Shown: positions 1,941-42,771 of the stretch, in pieces
Layout: the number at the start of each line of letters is the position of its first letter
Position numbering within the stretch: the stretch's first letter is position 1
The notes under the pieces: model-generated
What the model was told of the DNA's origin: nothing
Database searches by the model: none
The model's input: the letters and a program-made list of their open reading frames with translations, nothing else
Made by a program: the position numbers and the translations under genes
Assembly (NCBI GenBank): GCA_016748015.1
Contig: JAAOMT010000699.1
Coordinates: 248,001-312,000, forward strand
Length of the DNA stretch: 64,000 bases
From: Geosiphon pyriformis uo1
Lineage: Eukaryota; Fungi; Glomeromycota
Reading direction: 5' to 3'

Positions 1941-3388
1941 TTATTTTGGCACCAAAGGCAAAGGAGGACATGCAGCCATAAGGTGTCCAAAATAAGGACC
2001 CTTGTGTGAGAGTAAAGAAGATCGATTTTTAGCTTTTTTTATCTTTTTTCAGTTATTGCAAAACTATTTAAAAATATTTACGAGTTAGCTTAAATTATCA
2101 ATTTATCTCTTATTTATAGAATTAAAATAACATACTTTAGATTCATATAAATCTTCCCTGGGACCTTTAAGCTCGTAACACTCATATAATTTTGGTTCAT
2201 TATCAGTACTCAAACCTTGACAATCGCAATCCACCTTTGCGATCCAGTACTCTCGTGCATGATGCGTCCATTTTATCTGACGAGTCGGTTGGGGCAATCG
2301 TGGAATCAAATCATCATAATTGGTCACTCGAAATACTGAGTCTTTAAGGAGAGTATTGATATGGTTGGAAAATTGTTGATTTCCAATTCTAGGTAAACCA
2401 TAGGTAAAGATTTTAATATCGGGTATGTGGCCAGGAGGAAGTTTACCATTGTAAAGTATCCCAAGAGCTGTGAATATTGCGAATACTGTAATTGAAAACC
2501 GAAATGATGACATAAGGTTATTTAGTATTAAATCAGGCATCAAATTTCAGAAATCTAAATGACAACCTCCCCCAACGCCATGCCCAATCAATCGATAATG
2601 CCACCGAATAGCAACAGCCCGATTCATCCGAGCCCAGTGAAGTTTCAATGATAATAATTTCCAACCCGCTAAAAATTCTGTATAAAATTCTTGATCTACC
2701 ATTACCCCCGTTGCATTTCGATAAAACATCGTAGGTCGACTTGCTTTCCTAAAATTTGCATCTAATCTCCAACCACGGAATAAAATTTGGGCATTCAATT
2801 TATGCTTGCCGGAAAGAATCAATGCTAAAGTTTGGTATAAAATTTATGATTGGGATTTTGAAATATACAATTCTTAAAAGTTTAAATTCTTAAAATTGAA
2901 GCGTTAATTACCATGAAAACGGTCAGTTAACTTTAAAACTTTTTTCGAATTACTGATCTGGTTTTCCTCTAGACAAGATGCAATGGCGGCGAAAGCTGCG
3001 AAATACTGGATATCCAAATATTTAGGGTCTTGTTTAGGTAGAAGTCTTCTTGTTAATTGAGGTAATATTCTTTTGATTACTGTGATTTAATGTTTAGGTG
3101 TTATACATTTATCAAAGGCCGGGTTTTTTTTAGGTAAGACACATGCTGAAATATTTGTTTGATTGAATTTCGAAATATTTCTGGATAAAGAATTTTGATA
3201 TTCTATTGGAAAAACGAAAATCAATTGATTCGGATGAGTTTCCATGGATTTTCATTAAGAACGGACGACACATACTGACCATACGGAAATTCATGGTGAT
3301 TTGATTGAAAAGATTGGAAAAAAATATTCAGAATTACAATGATCAGTGAAAGAAATCCTAATATTCGCCCAATCCATAACAATGGATT
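1941..3388 (-). pseudogene. Lipase_3-fold protein paralogue L1, Ser-to-Gly elbow, probably pseudogenised
   Basis: Hydrophobic N-terminus (MNPLLWIGRILGFLSLIIVILNIFF); exon ending ASCL..LTDRFHG; ILFRGW; GHGVGG|V-FAIFTAL across a phase-1 intron (donor 2566, acceptor 2486); TYGLPRIGN; RVTNYDDLIPRLP; HHAREYWI; CDC; last exon HKGPYFG. Disruptions: stop after KLIRIN in exon 1 and in-frame TGA at 2049-2051 in the last exon. Confidence 0.85.
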
Positions 3389-5543
3389 CATTTTCAAATT
3401 TATCATGTATTCAGATAAACTCAAATTGTAAATTCATTCACGATATCAATATTTGAAGTGAATTTTTTAAACCTAATCATATTATCTTGCTCAGTGGTGG
3501 ATTAAATGTTTAAACTTTAAAAAGTATTCGATTTGCAAGATGACAGGAAAAATATTTTAATTATTTATCTATGAAATAAATTTGATTGACACAAATTTTT
3601 AATATTTTGAAAATCGGAATAATTACATGTAAACCTTCCTGACTTTCATTGAGATATATGAGTCTTGAGTATTGAAGGGTTTAATTAGTAAAAGGAGTAG
3701 ATTTTTGTTATGATAAATTTTTTTAAAATTATATGTAGTAAGATTTTAGCCATTAATATGGTACTTGATTAAAATTTTCATTTTTTTTCCCAACAAGAGG
3801 AATTATAACAAAAACATTAATAAAATATTTATCAGTCAAAAATATTTAAAACTTCGACCTTTCATTTTCGAATAAATTATAAAATATAAGCCAATAATCT
3901 TTCAAACCGTCTCTTTCTATTTTCATTTCAATACGATTAATACTTTACATAAGGAAAATTCCAAAAAGTTTGATTTATAATTATTGATATTTTTCTTGAA
4001 TATAGATGTTTGGTATTGATTTTTCTTTCAAAGTTCATATTATGATTACCTCATTTTCCTCAAAATATGATATCTTTCATTTTATCCAAAAAATGAAAAG
4101 AGTTTCTCACCCACTTTAGAATTGGAAAACAAGAAACTTGAATAAATTGAACTTGAACAAATTTCATAAACCCGTAAGTCAGAAAATTAAAATCAACCAA
4201 AATTTCAAATATATCCCAGCTAATATTTTCCTCCCAAAACCTCCTGTGCTTTTTTTAAATTGTGAACTTGACGAGTATAAAATATCACGAGATTTCTAAT
4301 TAAAACTTTATCGTTTATCTATTGTGATATCTTCTTTTTTAAATCAACAATAAAAGAATCAAAGATCGATGTAAATAGTCCAAACAAAGATTTTCTGAAA
4401 CAACCAAATATTTATAAATTTTCTATACAAAGAAAATTATTGAGACTAAAAAATTTTAATGAAGCAAATAAAGTGGATTAACAACAAACGAGCCATAGAA
4501 ATTCTGTAAAGCGGGGCTGTTTCTTTAAATCAGGTGGTCTAAATAGTATTCCACGCAAAAGATGGGAGGAAACTCGCAATCATTTAAAATTTATATTTAT
4601 ATTATCCATGAATGCCACTTATCTTGGGAAACGGTTTGAGAACTCAGATGGTATCAAAGAAGTTTTATGATAAGTCTTGGGCTCGAAGCTCTGCTTCATT
4701 AATGGTCTCAAATATCAGGAGTTTGAAACTTTTGATTGGGTGATTCGCGATTTTGATCTAAACCCTTATCTGGCAGTCTCAACCTTAAGCTCGTCGAATT
4801 TTTAAAATTTAACATGCATGATTTATATCGTTACAGTTTTTATCTTCCGAACCACACAATTATGCGGAAACTGATTATTTTTCAGATTAAGATCAATAAA
4901 ATGATAGAAATATTCAGACTTTGAAAATTTTAACATTGATATTATCTGGTATTTAATTAAAAATGTCAAACATAACTTTAGATAATTCCAAGAATATTGC
5001 ATATATAATAGAGAAGCTAAGTTTTTTTCTGAAATATAAATTAATGTTAAATATTAATATTAATATTACAAAAAATGTTGTACAAGAAGGAGGTAGTAAA
5101 TGTCTTTCTACAGAATATGTTAATAAAAAAACTTCAATGGTTCTATATGAATTCTTGATATTTTCAAGACTCTAGTTTAACAAGAAAGTAATATAATATA
5201 TTTATAACTTTGGTAATTAATCAAATCTTATTTTTGTTAAATGAGATTATATAAATTTTTACAAAATTGTAATATGATGACAATAATCAATTTTATAATT
5301 GATAACTGAATGTTTAAAATTCAAATTAATCATTTCTGCATTATGTACACATATGTCAAGATGTTTGATGCACAAACAAGAAACACGTTTGCATATTTGC
5401 AAGGTCCACCTACTGTGGAAGCAATTTTAAGTAACGAAAATATACTATACTATTGTAAAATAAAATTCTGTTTTATTCCTTCATAACAGTGTGATGGCTA
5501 TTTAAACTTATTGAATTACAGAATAATTGTTTCGTTTTCCAAT

Positions 5544-8041
5544 TTATTTTTCTACCACGTGAATAGTTTTCTCCTCCCTTTTGGTTTGACGTTTAGAGGC
5601 ACTATACATTCGAGATATCTCGTAAGAAGACATCCAACCGGGAGGCCACAGTTCGAGGAGCTAGGTGTATCATAAAATAAGAAAAAGCATCAAGAAATTA
5701 CGAGAGGTTCAAAATTTTGATCACTAGAGTAAAAAAAAACCATTATTTACCCGCTGGTATAATATTTTTCGCATTTTTTGTTCTGAAAGACGCTCTGACT
5801 TATCTTCAGCCCCCCTTTGAAATCAAAGAAAAACAAATTTTTAGTTGAAAACGAAGTTATAAATTGAAATAAAAATTTATCAAATTACATAAGGTCATTT
5901 TTCATCATTGTAATAGCCATCTCCATCTGAATTATTTGCCATAAAAGCCCCTTTGTTTTGACGGTCCACTCGAATTTCTTGCCTTTACTGGAAACAGTGT
6001 GATTTGCCGTCGCATCTCTGTCTGTGTTTGCACTGGAAAGATCGGATGATAGTTCCGAACTGAACAGAGATGCATGCCTTTGTAGAATTTCGGGTATGAT
6101 TTCTTTCAATTCTCCTTCAAATTTTTTCATTAGATTATCTCTCTGTTGTTCCAATTCTGGTATTTTTATGGGATATAGGGTCCTTTTACAGAGTCTCTAT
6201 AAGAAAGAAAATAAAAATTTATAGATGAACGAAATGTCAGGTTTAATAGAATCATCAAAACTAATAAAAAAATTCTATGCAGTTTTCTGCGCGGTCAAGT
6301 ATGTTCAGAAAGCTGAACATACTCGACGTATTGATGTGGTTCTTATAGAAAATAAATTAAAAATGTTAAAATGTAACTAACCGTGACTGTATACTTATTG
6401 TATGGCAAAATATTGGTTACTATTTTGAAAAAGTTCTCATTAAACTCGTTATATTCGTAGGCTTTGTTTATAGTAGCTAATAAGTGAGGCTTAAGATTAG
6501 GAGGAAATCTATTTTTAAGCGCAAAAGATTCTGAAGGAGTGAAAATGACACATGGCAAATGATTAACAACAGTTTTATTTTAGATAGAGTAAATTATGGA
6601 ATTTTCTAGATTAACGTACCTGCAGCTACTTCTGATTTAAATGTGTCCAAAATTTTTTGCACCTCCGGATTTATAGATTCCTAAAAAGTCAATCAATAAT
6701 AAAAGAATGAGCTCAATTTTTCTACTAGTCAAATCTCTACGATCTTGGGTAAATAGATAGGTAGGTAGGTAAGTAGGTACCTACCACAGGATAAGGTTTA
6801 AGAGTTTTCCCCGGAGTTTTGTTAACTTCCGGAATAAATCTCGGGGTAGGAGAAGGAGAAGTTATATCTTTTCTATTACATGAATTATTGGCTTCATTTT
6901 TTGAATGAGGCATTGGATTGACGATAAGAGAGATAGTACCATTTCTGTTAGGTGGTGGTAGTGGTGCATGTGCGGGAATGGAGGAATCTTTAATTATATT
7001 TGCGGCCTTTGAAGTGGACGCATGATTTGAATCTTTCAAAGAAGACTGACTTGAACTCTTCAAAATAGGCTGACCGGAATACTTAATTGACGAAATTTGA
7101 TAATTGTCTTTGAAAATTAATTTTTGAGGGACAATAACCTCAAAAATTTGAGAATCTGAAAACTGTGATGATGATGTTTTCTTTGACCCATGGATAGTAT
7201 TGTTGCTATTATCTTCGGCACCTGTATGACCTTTCTTTGATATCTTTCGTACCCTAACGTCCATAGCGGTTGATTTTCGTTTGGAGAAGACCTTTTTCGT
7301 ATTAGGCGACGCATCACTAATTTAAGGAAATCGAAACATCAATAAATATTTCTATTTGGAAGGTTTGACAACAAGACCAACCAGATGAAACTGTGGAAAA
7401 TCATACTCAATATCCGAGTCCTCAACTTGTAGAGGACCTTTCCAAACAAAGAAACCATCAACAGAGCGACGAATCTCTCCAGTGTAGCGTTGTGATGGAG
7501 CTAACTCACTATCATCAATGAATGGATCTGAAAAATCATAATTTTCCATTCTTGCTTTCTTTTTTCGCACTTTTTTCTAAAAGGAAAAAAATGGCAATTC
7601 TTTGAAAAGAGGGTCGAATTTGTGAAAAGCTTACTATACCTCTTGTTCAATCTTTGCCCCTTTTGTGTTGATCTCTTCATTTTCAAGAATACGACGAAGA
7701 GGATCCTTTTCTGAAGAAAAATCACCGGGCTGTGTTGAAGTCGGGGATGGAGATTGAGGATCAGGGGTTTGAAAACCTTCTAATCCTTCACCCGACAAAT
7801 CAGACTCAGAGTCTGTTTCATTTTGTCTTGGAGGGGTTAGGGGTAAAACACCAGCTTCTTTTAACAAATCATGTATATCAACTATGTTGTTTTCTGGAAA
7901 TGTTAAAGGAATATTGATAGTTATCATTCTAGAAGGTGGTAGCAGAGTCGGTTCAGGTTTAAATTTTTCGCCCATTCTAACAATCTCATTAGATGGTTCA
8001 ACAGAGTCCTTTAAGCCTTTTCCGATTTTTTCTTTAGGCAT
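5544..8041 (-). CDS. HPC2: HIR/HIRA histone chaperone complex subunit Hpc2/ubinuclein (multi-exon)
   Basis: HUN-type motif YDFSDPFIDDSEL...DGFFVWKGPL; N-terminal ITINIPL..NIVDIH; C-terminal FPPNLKPHL, ILPYNKYT, KKFEWT, LLELWPPGWMSSYEISRMYS typical of fungal Hpc2/UBN; GT-AG introns link the ORF pieces. Confidence 0.85.
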
Positions 8042-8996: not shown

Positions 8997-9807
8997 TTTT
9001 TTAAAATCTTTGTAATATGCGAAACTTTTAATTTTTTCATTGATTCATTGATTAATTTAAATATTAAGTTTCGACCTCAAAATAAAGATAAAATTATAAA
9101 TAAAGATTCCAAAATTTTAAAATTTAGTTTAAAATTTGTAGAAACTTTTACTTTAAAAGAAGTTATTTTTGATCAATTTTCTTATTCTCTATTGCACCGT
9201 AAATTTCCAAGATTTTTAATCATATTTGTTTATGCGATTGCTGTTTTATATTAATATATCAAAGAAACTTGAATCACTATCTCCGCTAGGACTTTTCTAC
9301 AAACATTAACACATAGCATACTATTCATTTCATAGATATCAAGAAACAAGATAACCCATTGCTTATCCAAAATTTATTCTTATCTTGAAAATAATTAATT
9401 AATTTTATTTTCAACACATGATATTGAGTTAGTATATGTAAAACTTGATGACAAATTTTAACATATTGAAAGCCCATTATTATTTTTTAATTATTACTAT
9501 TATTAAATGCAATGGATACTTTTTTATTTTTTCGGTTATAATTCTCTTTTCTTTTTTTAATTTTTTTGCCCATAATCTCATTAATAGTTAAAGATCCTTT
9601 TGAATCAAATAACACATTCATACTTCCCAATTTTATCCCGCTACCAAAGATTTTTTGTTTGAAGCAAAAGTGTTTACTGCGCACATTTATTGTCCAGATG
9701 TTTCAGTATCACAGATTTTTCTTACATATGAATTATCTAGTAACTTATTTTGTTTTTCATTTTTCTTTAAGAAATCATGCTCTCCGACTAAATTTTTATT
9801 GAAACAA

Positions 9808-10732
9808 ATGTTTAAATCGAAAAATAGCTATGATTCACACTTTCAGGTTATTGAAAGTCTAAGGTATACAAAGCAGTTTATCAGCGTAATATTTGCAACA
9901 TTCAAGACACCAGAATGGATTTATGATGAATTTGATAGTATGGGGGGAACATCAGACCTGATAGACGTTCATGGTTTTTAAGAAAATTTTATATAAAGTA
10001 TTGAAATCTTGTAGCCAATCAGATCTTGAAAATGTTGACAAATATGTAGATAATAACATAATCTACGACAAATTTTACTCTGGACATGGCTGGGGCGCAG
10101 GTAAGTAAAATGTTAATTCTCAAAAAAAAATTGTTTTCTTTGCAATTGACAGTTTTTTTTCATTCAAATTTTGGCCATTTTGCAGCAATAATTTTCAACA
10201 ATTTTTGGTCAAAGCGGCTGATAATATTAATTACCTATGGAGCTCCGCGCATAGGAAATGATATCTTTGTAAGATATATGCAGAAAAGAATTTGGGTTGA
10301 ACGAGTGACAGTTAACAATGATTATGCTCCTTTATTCTTTGGAGATGATTATTTGACTCACACCTCAATGGAAACTTGGATTGTTTCAGATAAGAGTTGT
10401 AATTTATGGACAAGGTATGATGAACAAATAGAATTTTACAACGAGAAAGATTAGTTTGACTGATGTACCAGTCCTGTAGGAAGGGAGAATAAGGTCTTGT
10501 AAAATTAATACTTTTTAACGTATGATAAATCTATTTCTCTTTTCTGACCATATTTATTCGTATTTTTTAGAAATGTAACCTACGATTTAAGAATTTTCAA
10601 GGCACTATTCAAGTCCAACAGACAACTGCTCATTTAGATCCATATTTTAGCTTTTTTATGTCTCGTGAAAGATGTCAGGGTAGTAGACTTTTACGTAGAG
10701 AAAATAATATTGCCAAAGAAAGACATTTATAA
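9808..10732 (+). pseudogene. Lipase_3-fold paralogue L2, Ser-to-Gly elbow, pseudogene
   Basis: SGHGWGA|gtaagt at 10082-10106; TYGAPRIGN; RVTVNNDYAP; THTSMETWI; last exon KCN...AHLDPYFSFFM; several stops/frameshifts (9979-81, 10452-54); 5' end uncertain. Confidence 0.8.
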
Positions 10733-19613: not shown

Positions 19614-22437
19614 ATGTCTTCAGCTGTAAAGTTACCTTCACTAAAAACACTGACGTTACAAGCATCAGCTGCCGAATGGTTTGAAACCTCTATTCGTGAT
19701 AGAGACATAAAATATTTTGAATACAATAAATTTCATAACAAAAAATACTTTGGTGATGGAGCTTCCAGCGTGATAGAGAAGGCAAAATATACTATTGATG
19801 GTATGGATATAACATTTGCATTGAGAAAACTCAAACGAGTCACACAAAATGATAAAACCGAAGTAGAGGAGTTTATAAAAGAGGTTTGAATGAAAAAGTT
19901 TTACATTGCTAGTAAAGTAAGAATTGCTATATTATTATGCCAATTTAAAATTAAAGAATCGCCTGAAAACCTTTAGATAAAATTCTTGCGAGATATTGAT
20001 TTTTTCCCAAATATTCTAAGATTTCATGGTCTTAGCAAAACTATAGAAGGTATTTATTTTTAAGGCTCTTGATAAAATTCTTTTAACAAACACTAACTTT
20101 ACTTTATAAAATGTATTAGATGACAATATAAAATATATTTTAGTTCTTGAATACGCTAATGGAGGTTCTTTACGTGATTACCTATCATTAGAGTTTCAGA
20201 ATATGAATGGGAAAGAAAAGCTTCGGATGGCACAGGAATTGGCAAGGGGAATTCAATGCCTGCATGAAAACGAAATCATTCATCGAGATCTTGTAGGTTT
20301 TACACTTTGATATTTTAAAAGCTATTTTAAGATTAGACTACATCACTAAATATTTTACTTTTAGAATTCATCAAATGTTTTGGTGCATAACAAAACGATA
20401 AAAATATCCGATATTGGTCTTCCGAAAAATCAAAGTGAAATGCTAGGTTTAGCCAATGAGATTAAAGGCCAACCTGCTTACATAGACCCTCAATGTTTCA
20501 AAGACGAAGGATTCATCCGAAATAAGAAATCAGATATTTATGCTTTTGGCGTCCTCCTATGGGAATTAACAAGTGGCCGCTCACCATTCAAAAATACTAG
20601 AAAATGGATGCTTATATGTAAGGAAATTTTAATTTACTATAGTTCTATAAAGGCTCTACTTATAGGTAAAACTTCTAAATATTATTAGCCCAAATTGCTG
20701 ATGGTATACGAGAAACCCCTGTCGAAAATACACCAACTGAATATATTGTACTGTATAAAAAGTGTTGGAATGAGTCACTTGATAATAGGCCTAGCATCAA
20801 CGAAGTGAACGAAAAACTCAAGGGAATTCAATGGAATTCGGAAGATGCCTTGAGTTTTCAAACAGGCCACGTCTCATTAACACCACAGCTAACAAGTGAA
20901 ACCACCTTAATAAGCTCTATGGGTTTGGCTAATACAAGCATCATGGCTCTTTTAGAAGACATTTTAACTATAATCAACGAAGGTTTAGACATCTATACAG
21001 ATGAAGATACCTCAAAAATAATTCCTCGTCTAGAAAAACATCTTGAAAATGTTGGACAAAGCTTCAAAGATCTTTTCGAAACTATAAAAGTAAATCAAAC
21101 TTCCTCCAATTCAGATTTTTTGCTTGGTTTTTTTTACCAATTTGGAATTGAGATTGATGTCAACCTTAAGCAAGCTTTTTTAAAATATCAGAAAAGTGCT
21201 TCTCAAAAAAATATTTGGGACAATTTTTTCTCGGGAAATGTTATATGGAGGGTACCGGTACTGAAAAAAACAAACAAAAAGCCGTCGAATGGTATATAGC
21301 AGCAGCGGAAAAAGGAAATTCAGCAGCTCAATATCACCTTGGCTATTGTTACGGACATGGGAGCGGAGTTTCTAAAGATCTTGTAAAGGCTGTTAAATGG
21401 TATGCCAAAGCAGCGAAAAAAGGAAATCCAAACGCACAATTTAACCTAGCAATCTGCTATTTTAATGGGGATGGCGTAATCAGAGATCTCGCAAAAGCTG
21501 TAGAATTTTTTACAGCAGCAGCGGAAAAAGGAAACTCCAAGGCACAATACAATCTTGCAAATTGCTATTACGTAACCAAAGATCTTGAAAAAGCAATAGT
21601 ATGGTTTACTAAATCAGCGGAACAAGGACATTCACTTGCACAATGTTCTCTCGCAAATTGCTATTACGATGGAACTGGAATGACCAAAGATCTTGCAAAA
21701 GCGATAGAATGGTTTACCAAATCAGCGGAACAAGGACATTCAGTTGCACAATGTAATCTTGGACTTTGCTATTACAAAGGAACTGGAGTAACCAAAGATC
21801 TTGCAAAAGCGATAGAATGGTTTACCAAATCAGCGGAACAAGGACATTCAGTTGCACAATGTCTTCTCGCAAATTGCTATTACGATGGAACTGGAGTAAC
21901 CAAAGATCTTGAAAAAGCAATAGTATGGTTTACTAAATCAGCGGAACAAGGACATTCACTTGCACAATGTATTCTTGCAAATTGCTATTACGATGGAACT
22001 GGAGTAACCAAAGATCTTGCAAAAGCGATAGAATGGTATACCAAATCAGCAGAACAAGGACATTCAGATGCACAATGTCTTCTCGCAAATTGCTATTACG
22101 ATGGAACTGGAGTAACCAAAGATCTTGCAAAAGCAATAGTATGGGGTTTACCAAATCAGCGGAACAAGGACATTCAGTTGCACAATATCTTCTCGCAAAT
22201 TGCTATTACAATGGAACTGGAATAACCAAAGATCTTGCAAAAGCGATAGAATGGTATACCAAATCAGCAGAACAAGGACATTCAGATGCACAATGTCTTC
22301 TCGGAAATTGCTATTACAATGGAACTGGAGTAACCAAAGATCTTGCAAAAGCAATAGTATGGTTTACCAAATCAGCGGAACAAAGACACCCCATTGCCAA
22401 GTATTATCTTGACATTACGATATTTTTAAATGAATAA
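19614..22437 (+). CDS. Tyrosine-kinase-like kinase fused to Sel1-like repeats (two apparent frameshifts)
   Basis: Spliced kinase: GDGASS, FALRK, EFIKE|IKFL, LVLEYANGGSL, IIHRDL|NSSNVL, KISDIG, GQPAYIDPQ, KSDIYAFGVLLWEL, CW..RP; then about 12 Sel1 repeats; frame shifts at ~21210 and ~22144. Confidence 0.85.
21610..22385 (+). repeat. Seven near-identical 108-bp Sel1 repeat units
   Basis: Unit aaatcagcggaacaaggacattca...gcaaattgctattacgatggaactggagtaaccaaagatcttgcaaaagc... Confidence 0.95.
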
Positions 22438-22659
22438 CCAAAGATTTAGCGGAGACAGTTGAATAGTATACCAAAGCAGGGGAAAAGAGATCCGATGCAT
22501 ATTAAATCAAGATCTTTGCCTAATAAAACATTTAGTCATAATAACCTCACATATTAAGAAAATTTTTTTTTTAGTACTGAGTATTTAAATATTGAGTTGT
22601 TTCTACAAAATCAAAATTCAACTAAAATTCATCTTGTATAAATTCTAGCCATTTTTATT

Positions 22660-22679
22660 NNNNNNNNNNNNNNNNNNNN
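22660..22679. other. Assembly gap (N run)
   Basis: Run of 20 n. Confidence 1.
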
Positions 22680-23288
22680 AAATCAGCGGAACAAGGACAT
22701 TCACTTGCACAATGTATTCTTGCAAATTGCTATTACGATGGAACTGGAGTAACCAAAGATCTTGCAAAAGCAATAGTATGGTTTACCAAATCAGCGGAAC
22801 AAGGACATTCAGTTGCACAATGTCTTCTCGCAAATTGCTATTACGATGGAACTGGAGTAACCAAAGATCTTGCAAAAGCAATAGTATGGTTTACTAAATC
22901 AGCGGAACAAGGACATTCACTTGCACAATGTCTTCTTGCAAATTGCTATTACGATGGAACTGGAGTAACCAAAGATCTTGCAAAAGCAATAGTATGGTAT
23001 ACCAAATCAGCGAAACAAGGACATTCAGAAGCACAATATCATCTCGCAAATTGCTATCACGATGGAACTGGAGTAACCAAAGATCTTGGAAAAGCGATAG
23101 AATGGTTTACCAAATCAGCGAAACAAGGACATTCAGAAGCACAATATCATCTCGCAAATTGCTATTACGATGGAACTGGAATAACCAAAGATCTTGCAAA
23201 AGCGATAGAATGGTATACTAAATCAGCGGAACAAGGACACTCCATTGCAAAGTATTATCTTGACATTACGATATTTTTAAATGAATAG
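22680..23288 (+). CDS. 3' part of a second kinase/Sel1 copy (5 repeats plus the same C-terminus); 5' end lost in the gap
   Basis: Open frame of 108-bp units ending EQGHSIAKYYLDITIFLNE*; downstream ~210 bp nearly duplicates 22438-22651. Confidence 0.75.
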   Translation, partial: KSAEQGHSLAQCILANCYYDGTGVTKDLAKAIVWFTKSAEQGHSVAQCLLANCYYDGTGVTKDLAKAIVWFTKSAEQGHSLAQCLLANCYYDGTGVTKDLAKAIVWYTKSAKQGHSEAQYHLANCYHDGTGVTKDLGKAIEWFTKSAKQGHSEAQYHLANCYYDGTGITKDLAKAIEWYTKSAEQGHSIAKYYLDITIFLNE

Positions 23289-29696: not shown

Positions 29697-31423
29697 CTAT
29701 TTTTTAATGCTAATTTTCAAACTAGCTTTTGCAATCTCCATAATTTCTTCCAAGTCGATATTCTCGAAGTCATCATCATCATTATATGTCATTTCAGGGT
29801 CATATTCATCCCCGGACGGCCGAACTTTTCGTTCATCCAACGTGTATATTGACGGTGGTGATTGATGTGACGTTTGTTTACTTGAATCATAATTACCAAT
29901 TATAGTAGGAGATCCACCCCTATTAGGTAATTCCGAGATCCGATTCACTTTATCATACCATCCTTCATTTACCATATATTGAATTCCATTCAAAATACCA
30001 CCAAGTGGTAAAGAAAAAACAATAATATAATAAGTCCACGTTTCATGATATCCAAAGGCCGAAGGAATAAAGTATACCAATGCGGGTATCCATTGACATA
30101 GGAATATAAAGAGATAAGCTATTATTTTTTGTGCGACTTTCGCGCTACGATTTTCACCCATTTTAGAAAGTTCGATTGACTTTATTTTTCCGAGTAGACC
30201 AATATAGAAGTAGGAGGAAGACGAGAGCACGAGGAGATTCACCCCCATCAGAATCAATGGAATCGTGTAATTTTCTTGTGAAGTGTAACACCTAATCCGG
30301 GAAATTGGGAAGACATTATATGACGATCTCTGATTTTAAATAAATCAGTTTTTAAACTTTTTAATTACCAGAAACCATCAGCCCCAAAACTGTCCCACAT
30401 TGGAATATAAAATCCGCAAGGTATCAGAATAGCCTATATTAAAAGAAAATTAAAGAAAATTGAGATGAATCAGCTTAATAATTAAAATTTGGAGATCCAA
30501 GGACTCACCATGATCCAAATTTTATAATCAAAACGACCAAAATCAAAACTCAACGTCAAGTACACTATATTGATAGAAAAAATATTAATTATTTGAAATA
30601 TTAGCTACCAAAAAATTATGCATAAATGTCAATAAATTGATATAATTATTTTACCTCTCAACCACGTTGCAAGTGCTATCGTTCCTACCTTGGAGGTGGG
30701 ATAAAATATTGAAATTTAGGCACATTTAAACTTAATTTTTGAAATTAAATTTTAAAGATTAAAAATACAATTCACATACCAAAACCATATTTGAAATAAT
30801 TAGCCAATACATTGCACCACCAATTATTGTACAATATGGAGGATCCCATATTTCTTTTTTAAACGCGGGCATTGCCTTTGAAAATCAAAAATTATAATTA
30901 ATTAGAATACATCTTTATTGGAGCAATCAAAGAAAAAAAAACTTTATTTACTAAATTTATTGTTTCCACTAGATACAGGCCTAGCTCTGCAAAAAAAAAC
31001 ATTTTTCAAAATTTTAATTCTCAATTAATACATTAATACCTTAATAATCAAAACTTCATTCAAGCATTTTCTTATATGTTTACCAGGTAAAGCAATATAA
31101 AGTGGTAACTTATAGGCCATCGACAACGACTTTGATTGACTCTTCCACCGTGAAAAAATTCGGAAAAGAACATAACAAGAAATTACTCCATCAACTTGCA
31201 ATAATGACAGCCCAATCCAATATAATGGACGAATATTTTGTGGACCATGTTGGGTTATGTACCCTTTTTGGCTAATTTCTTGGAGGATTATTGGATGACC
31301 TGCATTTGTGTAGTGAGGTATTATTATTAAAGAGATAATTAAAATTAGGGGAAGGGTTAAAGATATAGATTTGATTGGGTTTAGATTTTGTTTTTGGCCC
31401 ATTTGCATTGCTCGTCTTATCAT
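29697..31423 (-). CDS. 7-TM GPCR-like protein G2 (cAMP-receptor/Git3-like), multi-exon
   Basis: N-terminal hydrophobic segment; KSLSMAYKLPLYIALP; CTIIGGAM; FGRFDYK; FGADGFW|C; KIIAYLFIFLCQWIP; GGILNGIQY; acidic C-tail. Confidence 0.85.
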
Positions 31424-33047: not shown

Positions 33048-34424
33048 ATGGGGAACTTTTTATGGCATCAGCACTTTGTTAAAAAATGGAAAATAGTTTT
33101 AAAACATGTATTGCTGACAAATTTTGTGGTTTTTCTTTTGAATCCAGGTTAGCAAAAAACTTTTTAGTCCGCTAAAGTTACCCTGATTCATACAAATTAA
33201 TCCACACGATAAGTATACTTTATTAGGAAGTATCGATTCCCGTGATCTCCTAAATGAATTCACAATATTTCCGTCTTACAATAAGTCAGGCTTGGGGATG
33301 ATAAAACTTCCACTAATCTTTCCAGGTGGACAAAAAAGACCATGGGGATCTGACCTTCCTAAAGCTTCGTCTACAAGAATAATTGTTAAGGATCCCTTAA
33401 CAATTGAATTTCTCGGGGAAATGGCGATGTATGCACGTTCTGCCATTTGTGATCTGGATCCCAATAAGCTTGGTTTGTATTTTACCTCTTGTTGAAATTC
33501 ACGAGTTTATCCTGGATTAATTTTTTAAAAGAAAGTTTGAACCCCTTCAGCCGGTATCAAAGTGCAAAATCCTGCTGCTGGGGTTCGTCAAATAATTTCG
33601 TATTTTTCAGGTCCTGGAATGGTCCCAACTCACGAGGAATTCGAAGACCCTGTGATGAAGAAATACCCAGTGTCAAGAGCAGGGTTAGTGAACCATTATT
33701 GGTACACTCATTTTGAAAGAAAGAAGCCGGCATTCAAAGAGATGCTAAAAAGAAGTCTAAAACCTTCTGGAGTGATTAGTGAGGTTGTTTTTACAGGTTT
33801 TGGTTTGGGTGGGGGTAAGTATAAAATATAAACTATTTTTTCACCAAATTTTGAAAATTCTTAATTTAATTTATTAATATCTTTCAATAGTTTACGCAAT
33901 GTTTGCCGCATTAGAATTCAGCGACCAATACCCTACAATTTCTTCACAAGTTGTAACATTTGGTTCTCCGAGACCGGGGAATGCTGAATTTGTCCGATAC
34001 TTTAACTCAAGATTTCCTAATAATCTATATAGAGTCGTAAAGTTGTTTGATTTTGCTACATCTCTCCCACGTTTTCAGAAAGATTATCGACATCCCCACT
34101 TTGAATATTTGATCGTAGAGGAAAAAAATTGCGACTGTTATTACGAAAAATCAGCTCCATTTAAATTATTCAAGTGTTTACCTAATTGGAAAGGCGAGGA
34201 ATCGAATGTAAGTTATTTTTTCTTCGATTAAATACTTATTTTTATTACACATTAAATTTAAATTGGAAATTTTATATTACTTTTGGAATTTCTTCTCATT
34301 AATACAGAACTGCAATAAATTCAATATCCCCCATTTGTCACAAGACTGGTTAATAAGTTATAAAGCACATACAGGTCCTTACTTTGGAACCGAGATGAAA
34401 TGTGATTTAAAATCATTTGATTAG
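33048..34424 (+). CDS. Lipase_3-fold paralogue L3, Ser-to-Gly elbow, apparently intact (5 exons)
   Basis: MGNFLW..KIVLKHVLLTNFVVFLLNP; MYARSAIC; VVFTGFGLGG|VYAMFAAL (Gly GGT 33802-04); TFGSPRPGN; RVVKLFDFATSLP; YRHPHFEY; CDC; AHTGPYFG; stop TAG 34422-24; splices restore the frame. Confidence 0.85.
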
Positions 34425-36711
34425 TTGCCACCAGATTTTATTGCGAAAAATCACCGTCATAAAAATCAATCAAATATTTTAATGTGAACTTTGATTTACA
34501 TGTATCAACCATTGAATTAATGGGAAATTTAAAATCTAGTTAATAGATTATTAACTAATTATATTGAACCATTTACTTAAAATAGAAATTAATTTCTTGA
34601 CGAAACTTAAAAGAAAAAATAGCAAAATTTTTATTAATTGAATAATTATTACTATTATAGGTGATCAAGTAAATAATGCTAATATATCAATTTTCGAACA
34701 TATTTTTAAATTTCTTATCAAAATTAAATTTATTAAGAATTATACTTTTTAAATAAAGGTAAAACTTTAGTTTTAATAATATCACAAAAATCTCAAATTT
34801 TATTCTTCTTTTTTACAAAAAATAAAAATATAAAATATTAAAATCTGACAACCAAATATTTTCTCTGTTATACACTAACATATTATGAACAAAATTTTTA
34901 ATACATAAACCAGTCTTAACAGTATTTTTGAATAGTACAAGTAATTCAAAAAATCAATTCTTAAAAATAAAAGTCTTGACAATAATTATATAAATATATA
35001 TATTAATAGTAGCATTATGTAGTAATTAGAAAACAGATAAGCTTATAAGTAAATTGTTAGTTCAAATAATTCACTTATCAAAACAGTTTTCAATAACAAT
35101 TTTTTTTACAGTAGAATTGAAAGTACACACAAAAATGTGATTGGAATTCTCTTCAAAGAATTAATTAACAACTTAATAAGGTTTTGAAGCAGATTTTATG
35201 GCACCCAACTTAAAATCTGCAAATTCATTCACTTGTGAATAAAAAGCTTGCCAAAAATACCGTTAGAATTTACAAATGCCATTACAGAAGCCATTTTTTC
35301 CTTGTATTACACAGAAAAATTAAAAATAAATTTATTTTATTTAACTTAATTATATATTAACATTATATAATTATTAAGTTATTAATCAATTATATTAACA
35401 ATTGAATAACAAATGAAATAAAATAAAAATAATTATATATTAATTTTTGTGACAAGAAAATATAATTTTTTATATAATAATTAATAAACAAAAAAATTAT
35501 TTTTATATTACAAATATCAAAAAATGAAAATAAAAAATTATTTAATTAATAAAAAAAATGTAAAAAATTATTATTAATTATTTATTTTCTTTTAAAAATA
35601 ACGTTTAAAATACTTACTTTTGAATTCCTTTTAAATAAACTCAAAAACAAATAATATTTTATTTAATCATAACAGTAATAATAGTTTTTAACAATAATAT
35701 TTTTTTTATTTATCTTGCAAGACATTTGAAATTCATTAAAACACAATATTTAAATAAAATAGCTATAACTAATAAAGACAATAATACTTAAAAAATTTAT
35801 AAAAATTAAACCATTTATCAATTACATGGTTTTACAAAAAAAATTATACAGTCAATTATACAATAACTCTTTATTTATTAAGCAATTTTTAAAAACCAAT
35901 TTTTCAATATTTAAATGCAAAAGATTTTATTTATATCTCTATTTGCTTCATAGAAATAATTTAATTATTAATGTATCTGAAAAAATCAATGAACATACTT
36001 AATTTTATTCTACTTATTCTCTTGGCTCCCTTTCATATTGTTTCTTAGAAGGGTAAATTCTCGCAAAAGTTATTTACGTTAATTTAAAGCTTTGATTTAT
36101 ATGTGATTGTGGTATTATAAATGCATTGCCATCTGAAAACCCTTACTAAAAAAGCATTCAAATATAACACAAAAAGTACTTTATTTGCAGAAATAAGAAT
36201 TCTCAACTCGTGGTCACTACTCTGAATAAAACTTGGCAATCTAGGTAAAATCTAAGAATTCATTTGATCTTTACAAGATTTGTCGTCTTTTGCAATAAAA
36301 TCTTCATTTTTAAGTATAAGAAAAGATTGAGACTGCTATTATCTCATATTTAAGGGGTGACATAAGAATCCATCATTTTATCGTCTATTGAAAAAATCTC
36401 TAATCTTCTCTATATTGCGTGCGATGCTAAAATAATTTTATTTCATTCAGACTTCTTGAAAAAAATATTGGAAAACAGGCTCATATCTTGTTTTAAGCTT
36501 TGAAAAAAATTAAAAAATTGAATTTGGAATCTTTAAATTAGGGACGTAAAATTGAACTCTAAATATATAATATAAATGAGTTCTTAATACGAAGATTTTA
36601 ATATTTCAAGAGTTTGAATACTCTTTTCGTCGTTTAAAGGAATGGTATGCGTTTAGCTTACAATATGGTAAATCTAATAAGATTGTGTTTCGTTTAAACA
36701 TTTTTGGTAAG

Positions 36712-37906
36712 TTTTGTGATGGTAAAAATGGAAACAGAATATTAGGTAAGTGGCTGAGCTCTAAAAAAAAATTTTTGTGTATTAACTAATAGTTTTTTTA
36801 AAACTTGTCTTTGAAATGCTGACTTCAAAGCAAGAAATGCAATGGCAAGTCGTATTATATTTTTGGAAGCAAGGAATACGAAAGGCAAAAGAAGTACAGA
36901 ATAAAATGAATATGCCCCTTTCTACAATCTATAATATCCTCAAAAAACTCAAAATAAAAGGAACAATAAAGCATGCGGGTGGTAATAGTCGGCCAAGAAA
37001 GATTACGGGAAATGCTTCGAAAGTATTAGAGCAGATTATTCATAAAGATTTCTCAGTTTTCTCTAGATATTTAGCAATAAAGTTGGCTAAGAAGGGAATA
37101 AATATTTCTCATGTTACTATTCAAAACCATTTATCCTATCTTAATTATAAAAAAAGTCTTCCTAGAGCAACTCCAATACTGACCAAAGAGCATAAGTGAA
37201 AACATGTAGAATGGGCCAAAAAACACCTGAACAACGATTGGAAAAGAATAGTTTTTATTGACGAAACATCTTTTCAACTTTTTCAAAACACAGTAAAACA
37301 TTGGCATAAAAGTACTCAACCAATTCGTCCTATGCCTAAAGATCGAACAAAAATTCTTGCGTGAGAGGGTTTCTACGAAAAAGGAAAGACTAGTTTATTC
37401 TGTTTTGTTCAAATAATGAATGCTCAATTTTATATAAATATTCTTTGTAACCACTTACCTGAAATTAGAACAATGCTGGGGAATAATTAGCGATTCCAAC
37501 AAGATAATGACACCAAGCATACTAGCAAGCTTGCCAAAGAATTTATTGCTGAAAATACAACTGAATTGTTGGGGTGACTATCTAATAGTCCCGACTTAAA
37601 CCCAATAGAAAACCTTTGGGCTATTGTTAAAAAGAATGTAGAAAAAAGAATGCCTCAAAATCGTAGTGAATTAGAGAGATTTATGGCAAGATATTCCTGA
37701 ATCTACCTTAATTGGGTTAGTAAGATCAATGAGGCAGCTTTGTGAAATGATAATTGAGACAAATGGTAAAAGAATTTCCTATTAATTTTTTTTAATAAAA
37801 TTATAGGGTATTTTATTTTCTAATAATAGTTGTTTTATGTAATTTTTTACATTAGTTAAGACATAGTAATTATTTTTATGTTTCCAATTTTTTTATTACC
37901 AGACTG
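36712..37906 (+). mobile_element. Tc1/mariner (DD34E-type) transposon, inactivated
   Basis: HTH N-terminus; WKRIVFIDETSF; FQQDNDTKH; SPDLNPIENLWAIVK; right end ...ttattaccagactg|TA; left TIR degenerate; in-frame stops. Confidence 0.9.
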
Positions 37907-39162
37907 TATATCGCAAGTAAGACATCTTTGCTTCAACAGGTGTGAGGGAAATCTATTTTCTCACTTAGATTTGATGAAGACGATGAGTTTTATGGGACAC
38001 GTTCATTAAATTTGGTTTTTATCAAGATTTTGGAAATCATTGAAATAAGGTGTCATGGGAGGTCATTTGTAATTTTATTTTTGGGGGTGAAAATTTTCAT
38101 TCTGTAAAAAGTTCTCTAGGAACAAAAATAAGAATTATGATGTCAGTTTATTGATATTATAAACAAATGTTTGATAGATTTCATTCTAAACTAGCTAATT
38201 TTTTCATATGTATCTCTAATGAGATTGTCAATGTCCACGGGCTAATTTGTTTCAAGGGCATGTGGATCATAATAAAGAATCATTGAAAGATTTTTAGCCA
38301 AATTGATTATGGAAAAAACTAAGTAATGTTTGGTTTGGAACCAAAAAGCTTATTTTAGTTTGTTTAAATTATCTTTAACTCACATGGATAGTCAATATTT
38401 TTTAAAAGTTTACTGCTTTAGGTCAAATAACTTTATCTCATATGTCAATGCTGAATATCGTTAAAAATAATTCTTTATAATAATAAAAAATTTCATTTTA
38501 GTTTACACACAAAACCCTTAGTTTTGTAAACCTGGGGGTAAAATAAAGAAAATTTGAATACAAGTTAATATAAGTGGGATTTCTCTTAATTATTAATTAA
38601 AAACACAGGTATATTCAAGGTATGAAGATTCGTATATAATCATCAGTGAACTTTAATCTGACCTATCTATCTATCTCATATTCGATAATAAGCGATTTTA
38701 AATCTATCCTAACCAGAAAAACAGGCTTCTTGTTTAAATTCACGAATTGTTTTTGGATATTTGTAAATAATTTTGAGTTATGCAAATACAAAACTTGGAA
38801 AAAGAATACATAACATTAATATTAATTCGCTTTGTTATTTTTCTAGACCTGAAATATTCTCCCATAGAATCTTTAATTTGGATGAGAAAGTTCAAGAACA
38901 CAAATTTAGAAAATCTTAAAACAGATTATTTTCATATCATCTCCTCTGATTATATTGAACATTTGATTCTAATAATTAATTATCTAAATTCCCAATCTTT
39001 GCAACGGAAAAAGGGAAATGATACGTGATATGGATGTTGAATAGTTTATTCTGAAAATTTATAAAATATGGAATCAAAGTTAAATTTGTTAATCAAGCAT
39101 CTTCATATAGAAATAGTAAAAAATCTTCAAATGAAAGAACGACTTATTATTTTTCCTTCATT

Positions 39163-40712
39163 ATGACCACTATTTTTAATTTTTACTCCTGCATGGAGAA
39201 CATTCGAGCTCTAGTCAGAAATTATTTCAAAAGAAATATACCTTGGTTAATTTATTTGATTCTTTTAATTATTTTTGTAATTCAGTATGAAACTTTTTTT
39301 AAAGAGTTATCACTTGAAGAGAAACAAAATATATTGCTTGATGAGAAAATTTTCGAAACGTTTGGATTTGGACAAAATGGTTCTAAACCTATAGTCTATG
39401 GTCAATACAGAATCCTAAAACCAACATTGGAAATTAAACCATGCAAATTGTTTTGTGACATTAATAAAATATCTGATATTGAAAGTAAAAATGACACCAC
39501 TTCAAGGCTTAGATTTCAAACATATAAAAATGAAAAAATCAAATTAAGATTAAAGACGAGATCAATACCTAAAGTAATAGCTGCGGGTGAGCCGAAGAAA
39601 ATATTGATACCTTACGATCATGAAATCAGGAATTTAATCAACCGTTTTTCTGAATATGCAAAGTATGCATCATGTCTCAATGTTAAGAACTCAAATGTAT
39701 ATAAATTGAGTGATTCTTTTTATGGTAGGTGATTTCTTCACCTTTTTATCATTAATTTTAACGCTAATCTAATATTAATAAAATTTTTAGCAAAGATTAT
39801 TGACGATAGTCTTGAAAAGTATTTTGTCGTCTTAATTCGAGGCAGAGAATCATTGTTGTTTAACATTTCCAATATCGATTGGCAATCATCGATGGTCCCA
39901 TTTCGTAAAATACCCGGAGCAATGGTAAACAAGGTTTTTTATGAAGAATTTCAAAAAGGTTGGAGTGTTTTGAGACGAAAAATGACACAAAAAAGGATCG
40001 GCAGCCCATATCTACATCGATTGAGATTTGTGGGACATGGTGTTGGTGGCGGTACGAAATTAATCCAAATTATTTTTCGGATTGAGATTTAGAAATTTAC
40101 GAAAAATATACATCATTTTTTCCAGTGTTTTCATTATTGGCAGCGATCGATTTTCAAACATGGAATAGGCCAATAATGTTTCCAGTTCAACTCGACATTC
40201 AAGTGTTCACCTTTGGTCAACCGCGTATTGGCAACCGCCAATTTTCTACATTTGTCAATCATCATCTTAATGAACGCGTATTTCGTGTAACGAATAGGAA
40301 CGATGCCATTCCAAAATTTCCTATATATTCAGACGAAATTTTGTATATACATCATGCAACCGAGTATTGGATTTCTTCCGATACTAATGAGAATGATTGT
40401 GATTGTATTCATCAAAACAATTGGACAAGAGACAAAAGATCGTTGGATAAATTGTATAAATGTTTGGGAGAGGAAACTGTAGGCAGATATTTGGCTGAAG
40501 CAAAGGAAAGTTCAAAAATTGGTTCATTTTTCTTGTTACAAAATTTTGAGGTTAAAAATTTCTCTTTAAAATAAAAATCTAGATTAACGCATTCTTATTT
40601 TGACCTTTAGTCTTGTAATGCAGCTACCAAAAGTATTTATTCGAATGAAGATGTGTTTACTCATAGGGGCCCTTATCTTGGCTATTTAATGGGACATTGC
40701 CCACAATTATGA
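39163..40712 (+). CDS. Lipase_3-fold paralogue L4, Ser-to-Gly elbow, N-terminal membrane anchor (4 exons)
   Basis: IPWLIYLILLIIFVIQY; YAKYASCL..DSFY|A; VLIRGR; FVGHGVGG|VFSLLAAI (Gly GGT 40039-41); TFGQPRIGN; RVTNRNDAIPKFP; HHATEYWI; CDC; THRGPYLG; last donor probably 40551. Confidence 0.85.
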
Positions 40713-41352
40713 TTAAAAAATCAAAGATTTGAATTCTTTTAATATCTGCATTTCATTCTTTTTCATCAATAAAAGTTACAAAATTTCGAATGCAGCTATG
40801 AGATGCACCAAAAAATTTCTTGAAAAATAAAATTTTCATTTTGAATATAAGATATAAATCTCTTGTTTTATATATTTGTTCAAAAATTGTCAATTTTCTT
40901 TGGAAGAAATTCTTTTTTCGAGGTATTTTGGAGACTTTTCGTTAATGGTTAAAAATTAATTGTGTTAAAAGTAGTATTGAAATATTTTATAAATATTTTA
41001 TATAGTATATTTAATGAGTAATATTCTACTGTCAATATTCCTTCTTTAGACATGAATCCTCCCCTTCAGATAAAAGCTGAACAAAGTCCAATATGGCATG
41101 ATAAAAAATTTTATAATTATGAGCTAAAAGAATACAGCAAAGTTAATCGATTTAGCATATTTTGATATTAGAATACATATAAGGACCAAAAGTTGTTGAA
41201 ACTTTATATTTCTGGAGGCAAGCAAATATAAAAATAACGTATCCATGTGCATATTTTCAGTCACAATAAGGAAATGTTTTGATCATCAATAAATTATCAT
41301 ACATCTGTCCTAGTTTAAAAATTTTTTTCAAATGGAACATATCTGAATCACA

Positions 41353-42771
41353 ATGATTTCAAAAATTTTTACCCACTCTATTTTAAGGCGAATTTTCTAT
41401 TTCGGTTTTTCGTGTCTTTTGCTTTTCAAGATTCTCCCCGGAATATTACAGATACCTGATTCTCATTTGAAAGAAAAATCAACCAATGTCCTTAATAGAT
41501 ATTCTATAGGAACAAAATTTAAAAAGGAACTCACTAATAAACGTTTAAATTCGAGTAAAATTATTAGAAAAGTGTCGTTCAACACTCAAGTAAATTTATC
41601 TCATGAAAGCGATTATGATTATTATGGCTATTGGAACCGATCGAAATCATTTGAAAAACGTCATATAACCAACACATCATCTAAAAAAGGTTTACTCCGA
41701 TCGGACAATCTGTTTATGGAAAAATTGAAAAAATTCACTCTTTTCGCTAGTGAAGCATCTTGTTTAAATCCGGTCAACGATCAAAACGTTATAAAATTGA
41801 CTGATGAATTTTATGGTATTAGCATCTTACATTATATACATTATATTACTTTATGATTAATTCCCCAAAATTTCTTTTTTTTTAAATCTCAATCGTCTAT
41901 CTTAGCGAAAATAACAAGCATACGTAAAAACCAATTTTTCTTGATCCAGATTCGTGCCAAAGAGTTAGATTTTGACGTTACCTTGAAGAAGCGACTCCAA
42001 ACACGATACAAAAGTACAAATGATCTGATGATCGATAAAAATTTTTCCCTTAAATTTCAACTTGGATGGACAGAGTTAAGGCGTCATATTGGTCATAGAC
42101 GAAAAGGAATTCCGCCAGCATATAATTTGAGTTTTGTTGGACATGGGCTTGGTGGTGGTACATAAATATTTATATTTTGATCGAATTTCTTGACAAGACT
42201 CATCTAATTGACATTAATTTTTAGTGTTTGCTGTACTTGGAGCTTTCGAATTATTGACAGTAAAAGCGCCTGAATTATCTCAGATTGAAGTTTACACATA
42301 TGGTCAACCTCGATTCGGAAACTATCAATTCGCTCATAAGATAAATTCCTTTAAGAATCTAAAAATATATAGAGTGACATATTATAATGATTTTATACCC
42401 AAGTATCCAATGAGTTATCAGAAAGTACAATATTTACACCATGGACAGGAGCTTTGGATATCGCCAAAAGATTGTGGCTGCGCTACTTCCGATAATAATA
42501 ATGGGGATGATTTCAACATTTATTTATGCACAGGCCCCAAAACCACAAGCGGGATAAATTTGGAAAGTCAAGTAAGTTGTTATAGAATCAAAATTTTGTT
42601 TTTAATCTGAACAATCATTTAACAATTATTAACCATTTTTTAAATATTTAGGAATGCAATGGTGGAACCGAGGCTGCATCGGATGAAGAAGCTTTCGCAT
42701 CACATCTTGGTCCTTATATGGGACAAATGATGTCACAATGTCCTCCTATGGTAACAATCAATCATTCTTAA
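41353..42771 (+). CDS. Lipase_3-fold paralogue L5, Ser-to-Gly elbow, N-terminal membrane anchor (4 exons)
   Basis: RRIFYFGFSCLLLFKILPGIL; FASEASCL..DEFY|A; FVGHGLGG|VFAVLGA (Gly GGG 42145-47); TYGQPRFGN; RVTYYNDFIPKYP; HHGQELWI; CGC; SHLGPYMG; stop 42769-71. Confidence 0.9.

What the first reader, a model, noticed from the sequence alone, without database searches (positions are those of the whole stretch)
1941..42771. Family of catalytically dead (GxGxG) Lipase_3 proteins with conserved Asp/His: candidate lipid-binding pseudoenzymes
Seen: all five lipase-fold genes have Gly at the nucleophile position. L1 GHGVGG (GGC 2577-79), L2 GHGWGA (GGC 10088-90), L3 GFGLGG (GGT 33802-04), L4 GHGVGG (GGT 40039-41), L5 GHGLGG (GGG 42145-47). 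The oxyanion motif FRG[ST] is also altered (FRGW, FKTP, FSGP, IRGR, IRAK). TxGxPRxGN, the Asp of RVT...D.xP and the His of the C-terminal HxxPY are kept. Known: class 3 lipases need the Ser of GHSxG; Ser-to-Gly loss is how neuroligins became non-catalytic, and other alpha/beta-hydrolase folds serve as receptors (GID1, D14/KAI2). Inference: the paralogues are highly divergent yet share Gly with three different codons, and gaining G runs against the local C>T/G>A erosion. The substitution therefore looks ancestral and maintained, not decay. These proteins would be mis-annotated as lipases but may bind rather than hydrolyse lipids, which matters in a lineage of fatty-acid auxotrophic symbionts.
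Basis: partly seen in the sequence, partly recalled or inferred. Interest (0 to 1): 0.9.

Follow-up and report, generated by a model that had tools for sequence, protein, structure and literature searches.

The report
Serine-less lipase look-alikes in Geosiphon
Five lipase-shaped genes here (three intact, two broken) belong to a family of more than 200 copies, found so far only in the cyanobacterium-housing fungus Geosiphon pyriformis, that lack the serine a lipase needs to cut fat yet are kept by selection, so they probably bind something rather than digest it.

Summary
In detail: all five genes have Gly at the nucleophile elbow at the stated coordinates. The genome is Geosiphon pyriformis. 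L3, L4 and L5 are intact (347, 434, 393 aa) with N-terminal hydrophobic leaders, and one RNA-like run holds spliced L4 and L5 contigs with Gly unchanged. L1 and L2 are pseudogenes. The assembly gap lies in a Sel1 repeat, outside every lipase gene. Genome-wide, 219 of 305 elbow-plus-intron motifs encode Gly, against 28 Ser(AGY) and 21 Ala. A family model has the Rhizomucor-lipase fold and keeps Asp and His. It has also lost the oxyanion Ser/Thr, the lid Asp and the VHxGF His, and gained a Cys insert. The core is conserved; lid and pocket loops are hypervariable. Best reading: a lineage-specific family of exported pseudo-lipases that bind or recognise rather than hydrolyse (0.6). Lipid as ligand is untested. 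Retained Asp/His does not imply it (DPP10 precedent), and Ser/Gly has switched more than once (AU p=0.0014). The scan already reported this family from at least eight other stretches of this genome.

The parts
1941..3406 (-). L1: five-exon Gly-elbow lipase-fold pseudogene (3406-3280, 3202-2912, 2824-2567, 2485-2136, 2063-1941). Hydrophobic leader; premature stops at 3089-3087 and 2051-2049.
   Evidence: NCBI model G9A89_005387 (P0007) fuses its core to a second lipase domain, probably the neighbour just outside the window
9512..10690 (+). L2: decayed Gly-elbow gene (GHGWGA, Gly 10088-90) with several stops and frame breaks; approximate ends
   Evidence: very long branch
33048..34424 (+). L3: intact five-exon model (33048-33147, 33227-33472, 33551-33814, 33891-34207, 34308-34424), 347 aa, hydrophobic leader, GFGLGG elbow; no RNA test
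   Evidence: stop position read from the sequence
39163..40712 (+). L4: intact, spliced (39163-39724, 39791-40051, 40126-40505, 40611-40712), 434 aa. Signal anchor at about residues 26-42, basic pro-like region, Gly271, Asp334, His419, 9 Cys.
   Evidence: (three joints in run X1)
41353..42771 (+). L5: intact, spliced (41353-41815, 41906-42157, 42225-42571, 42652-42771), 393 aa. Hydrophobic leader at about residues 16-32, Gly235, Asp294, His372, 7 Cys.
   Evidence: (two joints plus a loose end matching exon 4)
40039..40041 (+). L4 elbow codon GGT (Gly in place of the nucleophile Ser); unchanged in the spliced contig
42145..42147 (+). L5 elbow codon GGG; unchanged in the spliced contig
33802..33804 (+). 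L3 elbow codon GGT
22660..22679 (.). assembly gap among Sel1-type repeats; not part of any lipase gene

Best explanation
L3-L5 are working members, and L1-L2 dead members, of a Geosiphon-specific birth-and-death family of exported or type-II-anchored pseudo-lipases. Shown: they share the elbow intron with the fungus's own canonical class-3 lipases, which carry Ser AGY, one transition away from Gly GGY. Shown: besides the Ser they lost the oxyanion Ser/Thr, the lid Asp and the VHxGF His/Gly, while keeping the core, the Asp-His pair and the Cys pattern and gaining a CxC insert. Inferred: without a nucleophile no acyl-enzyme can form; Gly persists because it best fits the strained elbow, and Asp/His persist as part of the scaffold. 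Inferred and untested: the conserved scaffold presents hypervariable lid and pocket loops outside the cytoplasm, where each paralogue binds an amphiphilic or surface ligand without cutting it. The most plausible place is the fungus-Nostoc interface or the cell surface, and the role is a recognition or sequestering repertoire rather than a simple fatty-acid shuttle. Step odds: not a lipase 0.85; acts by binding 0.6; ligand is a lipid or glycolipid about 0.35.
For: Elbow census 219 Gly / 28 Ser(AGY) / 21 Ala of 305. In 71 family proteins: Asp 71/71, His 56/64, elbow Gly 56. Oxyanion Ser/Thr in 8 of 117 Gly domains against 11 of 11 canonical. Further concerted losses and gains. Model pLDDT 88 with strand-turn-helix at the elbow; best matches are Rhizomucor/Rhizopus lipases. 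Column identity 0.46-0.55 in core motifs against 0.14-0.19 in lid and pocket loops. pN<pS in all pairs. Splicing of L4 and L5. Hydrophobic leaders in L4, L5 and 12 of 27 apparently full-length models. Ser-less mutants of this fold still bind ligand: PDB 1gt6 (S146A with oleic acid) and 2bjh. Every named expanded-clade protein checked is G. pyriformis, except one Rozella Gly-elbow protein that falls outside the clade.
Against: No ligand, localisation or activity data. Retained His/Asp is uninformative (DPP10). The pocket loops are not conserved, as one would expect for a single shared ligand. dS is near saturation, and the two closest pairs give dN/dS of about 0.5. Two of five local genes are dead. 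Expression rests on one low-depth run kept as contigs, tissue unknown. Sister taxa such as Ambispora were not searched directly.
Confidence: 0.6

Rival explanations
1. Protein-partner or decoy role. The pocket is vestigial and the proteins act through their surfaces, as modulators of membrane proteins (DPP10-like) or as decoys that absorb inhibitors or hostile enzymes and so shield the few active lipases.
For: DPP10 has Gly-His-Asp, is type-II anchored, and Gly-to-Ser does not restore activity (PMC4350108). Fast-changing loops and hundreds of copies suit an arms race. Active lipases coexist in the genome.
Against: The lid Trp (61/69), the Asp-x-Val-Pro pocket wall and the His-loop aromatics are kept. 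No partner is known.
Confidence: 0.2
2. Alternative chemistry. The intact Asp-His pair activates water or a substrate hydroxyl in the space left by the Ser, giving a slow hydrolase, lyase or transferase on an unknown substrate.
For: Asp is invariant and His about 88% conserved. Family-specific conserved residues exist: Asp in place of the VHxGF His (67%) and Tyr at nucleophile+5 (76%).
Against: The oxyanion hydroxyl is lost. The only strongly conserved Ser/Thr columns are the TFG and RVT motifs shared with canonical lipases. His is replaced in about 12% of members. The elbow tolerates Ala, Ser, Asp, Cys, Arg and Tyr.
Confidence: 0.12
3. Selectively idle expansion. Copies were spread by the repeat-rich genome, are weakly constrained and are decaying; only a few are needed.
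For: Two of five local genes are dead. The genome is 64% repeats (PMC9453076). Identity within the family is 29%, against 48% among canonical lipases.
Against: Synonymous sites are near saturation while the motifs and Cys residues stay 85-100% conserved. Reading frames are open, introns are retained (DNA duplication, not retrocopies), and L4/L5 are spliced.
Confidence: 0.08

Closest known systems
Fungal class-3 lipases (PF01764; Rhizomucor miehei, Rhizopus, Thermomyces lipases)
   Same: Fold (Foldseek E 8e-14; profile E 1e-33), Asp and His positions, lid Trp, TxGxPRxGN, leader plus pro-like region; the elbow intron is shared with canonical Geosiphon lipases
   Different: Gly at the nucleophile; oxyanion Ser/Thr, lid Asp and VHxGF His lost; extra CxC insert; hundreds of divergent copies
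DPP10 (and DPP6), inactive alpha/beta-hydrolase-fold proteins (PMC4350108)
   Same: Ser-to-Gly elbow with His and Asp retained; single N-terminal anchor; function unrelated to catalysis
   Different: Different family (S9B, with a beta-propeller); one or two genes with a defined channel partner, not a large hypervariable family
EDS1/PAD4/SAG101 plant lipase-like immune proteins
   Same: Same Pfam family (matched at E 1e-12 to 1e-3); used as signalling scaffolds (own knowledge)
   Different: Intracellular, fused to an EP domain, few copies; EDS1 and PAD4 keep the Ser (own knowledge)
Neuroligins and related cholinesterase-like adhesion proteins (own knowledge)
   Same: Extracellular, non-catalytic alpha/beta-hydrolase fold with Gly at the elbow
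   Different: Carboxylesterase clan, C-terminal membrane anchor, protein ligand
Lipase_3 expansion in Entomophthora muscae (348 domains; bioRxiv 10.1101/2023.09.13.557621)
   Same: Similar-sized lineage-specific fungal expansion of PF01764
   Different: Read there as host-digesting enzymes; the passages found do not report loss of the Ser; not checked here
Rozella allomycis EPZ35680.1 (P0117)
   Same: Class-3 lipase domain with a GHGQGG elbow
   Different: Keeps FKGS; falls outside the Geosiphon clade, so probably an independent loss

Membership tests
Lipase class 3 (PF01764) as a sequence/fold family | Pfam score above the gathering cut-off | tested here: met
   Post-elbow exons of L1, L3, L4, L5 score 35-48 bits against a cut-off of 22
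Lipase class 3 (PF01764) as a sequence/fold family | Rhizomucor-type alpha/beta-hydrolase fold with nucleophile elbow and lid | tested here: met
   AlphaFold model of family member P0085 (not a window gene), pLDDT 88; TM-score 0.7 to 1tgl and 3tgl by target length
Active class-3 lipase | Nucleophile Ser in GxSxG | tested here: not met
   Gly in all five genes; unchanged in spliced L4 and L5 contigs
Active class-3 lipase | Oxyanion Ser/Thr of FRG[ST] | tested here: not met
   Absent in L1, L3, L4, L5; present in 8 of 117 Gly domains against 11 of 11 canonical
Active class-3 lipase | Catalytic Asp and His | tested here: met
   L4 D334/H419, L5 D294/H372, L3 likewise; family 71/71 and 56/64
Active class-3 lipase | Ester or triacylglycerol hydrolysis | not testable with these tools
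   Needs an enzyme assay
Pseudoenzyme (non-catalytic homologue kept by selection) | Loss of an essential catalytic residue in an intact, expressed gene | tested here: met
   L4 and L5 intact and spliced; L3 intact, expression not tested; L1 and L2 fail (stops)
Pseudoenzyme (non-catalytic homologue kept by selection) | Purifying selection | tested here: met
   pN 0.50 against pS 0.71, pN<pS in all pairs; L4 and L5 against nearest kin dN about 0.55-0.6 with dS 1.6 to saturated. Crude estimate.
Pseudoenzyme (non-catalytic homologue kept by selection) | No alternative nucleophile in the site | tested here: inconclusive
Lipid-binding protein or receptor (GID1, D14/KAI2-like role) | Specific ligand binding | not testable with these tools
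   Only indirect: lid Trp and pocket-wall residues kept, loops hypervariable
Secreted or anchored protein | N-terminal signal peptide or anchor, disulfide Cys, N-glycosylation sites | tested here: inconclusive
   Hydropathy peaks 2.4 (L4) and 1.8 (L5), conserved Cys, 4 and 7 sequons; no SignalP run and no localisation data

The most novel reading that the evidence does not exclude
Geosiphon has turned a digestive lipase into a repertoire of several hundred variable, surface-exposed binding proteins that recognise or sequester Nostoc envelope or membrane lipids during capture and housing of the cyanobacterium. That would be a recognition or lipid-capture system for the only known fungus-cyanobacterium endosymbiosis, and a route by which a fatty-acid auxotroph handles a non-plant partner.
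Probability: 0.25. Interest if true: 0.88.

Novelty: new variant of a known kind. Interest (0 to 1): 0.62.

Why it matters
Domain counting would read these genes as a huge lipase arsenal for harvesting partner lipids. The census shows that about nine in ten motifs lack the catalytic Ser, and that most Ser-bearing copies inside the clade also lack the oxyanion residue. Only about seven of the loci examined look fully canonical. The largest visible enzyme expansion of Geosiphon is therefore mostly non-enzymatic. How this fungus recognises Nostoc, and how it gets fatty acids without a plant host, are open questions; intact expressed members such as L4 and L5 give direct handles for testing them. 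Dead alpha/beta-hydrolases are known individually, but I found no description of a species-specific family of this size.

Tried and rejected
Assembly gap as a cause: rejected, it lies among Sel1 repeats. RNA editing restoring Ser: no change at the codon in spliced contigs. Bacterial origin: unlikely, since the elbow intron is shared with canonical Geosiphon lipases and the best structural matches are fungal. One clean Gly origin with all Ser copies outside: rejected by the AU test, p=0.0014; loss followed by regain cannot be told from repeated loss, because deep branches are weak. A single-exon homolog search was blank, as expected from the length limit. ESM Atlas gave only generic Lipase_3 clusters. 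The look-up of encoding contigs had no record of the close L5 paralogue P0123, so no close-pair dN/dS for L5. The Geosiphon genome paper (Malar C et al. 2021) is not held. Literature searches found no description of the Gly clade. Database searches used single exons, one natural read-through ORF of L023, or stored proteins; searches with joined spliced models were left out, and joining was done only inside local scripts.
Full report
Observation. All five motifs are at the stated coordinates and have Gly where class-3 lipases have the nucleophile Ser. Each is followed by a phase-1 intron. The next exon carries TxGxPRxGN and the Asp strand and scores above the PF01764 cut-off for L1, L3, L4 and L5. 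No sixth lipase locus lies in the window. The assembly gap at 22660-22679 is among Sel1-type repeats, about 10 kb from the nearest lipase gene, and is irrelevant here.

Gene status. L4 (434 aa) and L5 (393 aa) are intact four-exon genes. Contigs of one public run, whose type is not on record, lie only on exons and skip introns: three joints in L4, and two joints plus a loose end matching exon 4 in L5. The Gly codons are unchanged. This shows spliced transcripts, not expression level or tissue. L3 is intact (347 aa) once a 5' exon at 33048-33147 is added; it was outside the stretch laid on reads. L1 has a good leader and core but premature stops at 3089-87 and 2051-49, the second upstream of the His. 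L2 has several stops. So the array holds three working genes and two dead ones.

Organism and family. Homologue names are Geosiphon pyriformis, and the assembly size fits the published 129 Mb in 795 scaffolds (PMC9453076). PF01764 gives 783 first-look candidates, counted exon by exon. An exact DNA pattern for GH-x-x-G[GA] plus the splice donor finds 305 places: 219 Gly, 28 Ser(AGY), 21 Ala; the reversed control finds 0. The pattern misses L1, L3, L4 and L5, so it undercounts the family; a few hits may not be lipases. Among the Gly codons 178 end in A/T and 41 in G/C, close to the coding GC3 of 0.28: the silent position has drifted while the Gly has held. An exhaustive phmmer search of 1.8 billion representatives gave 258 hits, and Gly dominates the top 150. 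Of about 45 proteins whose names I could check, all but four were Geosiphon. Three of the four were canonical Ser lipases (Coemansia, Panaeolus, Cooperia); the fourth was a Rozella protein with Gly that falls outside the clade. Restriction to Geosiphon is therefore likely but was not tested directly against Ambispora.

What was lost and kept. A model of one member, built on 71 family sequences, has pLDDT 88 and matches Rhizomucor, Rhizopus and Thermomyces lipases. The Asp is invariant, the His is kept in 56 of 64, and the lid Trp in 61 of 69. Relative to canonical lipases the family has lost the Ser, the oxyanion Ser/Thr (8 of 117 Gly domains against 11 of 11), the lid Asp, and the His and Gly of VHxGF. 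It has gained a Tyr at nucleophile+5 and a CxC insert. No new conserved Ser or Thr column offers a substitute nucleophile, though I could not measure distances in the model. Core motifs have 46-55% column identity; lid and pocket loops have 14-19%. L4 and L5 have a hydrophobic N-terminal segment, a basic pro-like region, conserved Cys and N-glycosylation sequons; 12 of 27 apparently full-length NCBI models also have such a leader, and many NCBI models are truncated or fused.

History. Seven fully canonical Geosiphon lipases (GHSLGG with [FY]RGT), plus two further GHSLGG loci, share the elbow intron, use Ser AGY codons, and sit outside the expanded clade (SH-aLRT 88-93, not firm). One A-to-G transition converts AGY to GGY. 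Ser copies inside the clade are scattered, use AGY in all 16 modelled from DNA (selected by a pattern search), and nearly all lack the oxyanion residue (1 of 17). A tree with all Gly rows in one clade is rejected (AU p=0.0014), with about 13 changes on a 80-row tree. Early loss with single-base regains is the simplest reading, but repeated loss is not excluded. pN is below pS in all 595 pairs, with dS near saturation. The family diverges faster than the canonical lipases (29% against 48% identity), and the two closest pairs give dN/dS of about 0.5.

Mechanism. From established lipase chemistry, a protein lacking both nucleophile and oxyanion hydroxyl cannot form the acyl-enzyme (0.85). The catalytic Ser sits in a strained conformation in most enzymes of this fold (PMC4861933), so Gly is the expected residue once catalysis is dropped; its retention shows that the fold is needed, not what it binds. 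Retained His and Asp are equally uninformative: DPP10 keeps Gly-His-Asp, is not revived by Gly-to-Ser, and works as a channel modulator (PMC4350108). Ligand binding without Ser is feasible in this fold (PDB 1gt6 with oleic acid, and 2bjh). Hundreds of exported paralogues with a fixed core and variable pocket loops fit a recognition or sequestering repertoire better than a nutrient carrier, which would need few conserved copies. I give binding 0.6 overall and a lipid or glycolipid ligand about 0.35. Rivals are a protein-partner or decoy role (0.2), alternative His-Asp chemistry (0.12) and idle decay (0.08). The link to the Nostoc symbiosis rests only on the family's distribution and is inference.

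Comparison and novelty. These proteins are members of PF01764 by sequence and fold but fail the test for active lipases. Dead alpha/beta-hydrolases are a known kind (DPP10; neuroligins and SAG101 from own knowledge), and large fungal Lipase_3 expansions are known (Entomophthora muscae). From memory, unverified, the Geosiphon genome paper noted an excess of Lipase_3 domains and read them as lipases; the paper is not held. Seven literature searches found no account of a Gly-elbow clade. The scan's own index lists the same family from at least eight other stretches of this genome. I had recorded my reading before seeing those notes, and they are not independent support.

Limits. Database searches were done exon by exon, with one natural read-through ORF, or with stored proteins. 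Searches with joined spliced models were left out; joining was done only inside local scripts. 

Verdict. A real, selected and expressed pseudo-lipase family, a new variant of a known kind. The ligand and role are unproven. Interest 0.62.

Noticed in passing
window 40506-40610: The spliced contig removes an L4 intron that reads GA...AG in the assembly (AAG|GAAAGT, one letter from a perfect GT donor). It is a GA-AG intron, an allele difference or an assembly error; the run differs from the assembly at two other sites (39631, 42444).
   Followed up: partly
window 21215-23221: Sel1-repeat region (336-aa ORF, 9 repeats, E 1e-105) with near-identical tandem repeats continuing across the assembly gap at 22660-22679.
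   Followed up: partly
window 55008-56564 (-): Intronless 518-aa F-box protein with a weak LRR match.
   Followed up: no
window 36816-37199 (+): Tc1/mariner-like transposase fragment (HTH_Tnp_Tc3_2, below cut-off) between L3 and L4.
   Followed up: no
window 29697-30257 (-): Weak 7tm_1 match (E 0.008), possibly an exon of a GPCR-like gene.
   Followed up: no
window 1941-3406; P0007 (G9A89_005387): The NCBI model skips L1's stops with invented introns and fuses it to a second lipase domain. Many two- to four-domain 'lipases' in this proteome may be fusions of tandem genes.
   Followed up: partly
P0117 (Rozella allomycis EPZ35680.1): An intracellular parasite of other fungi also has a class-3 lipase domain with a Gly elbow, apparently independently.
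   Followed up: partly
P0067, P0100, P0101, P0104, P0128; L031: A subclade with an Ala elbow (GHAIGG). L031 has Ser TCA, possibly reached through Ala GCA; it was not placed in the tree.
   Followed up: no
L006, L020, L041: Other Ser-type Lipase_3 genes (GHSLGA) that lack the clade's features; L006 and L020 also lack the elbow intron. They look like separate subfamilies.
   Followed up: no
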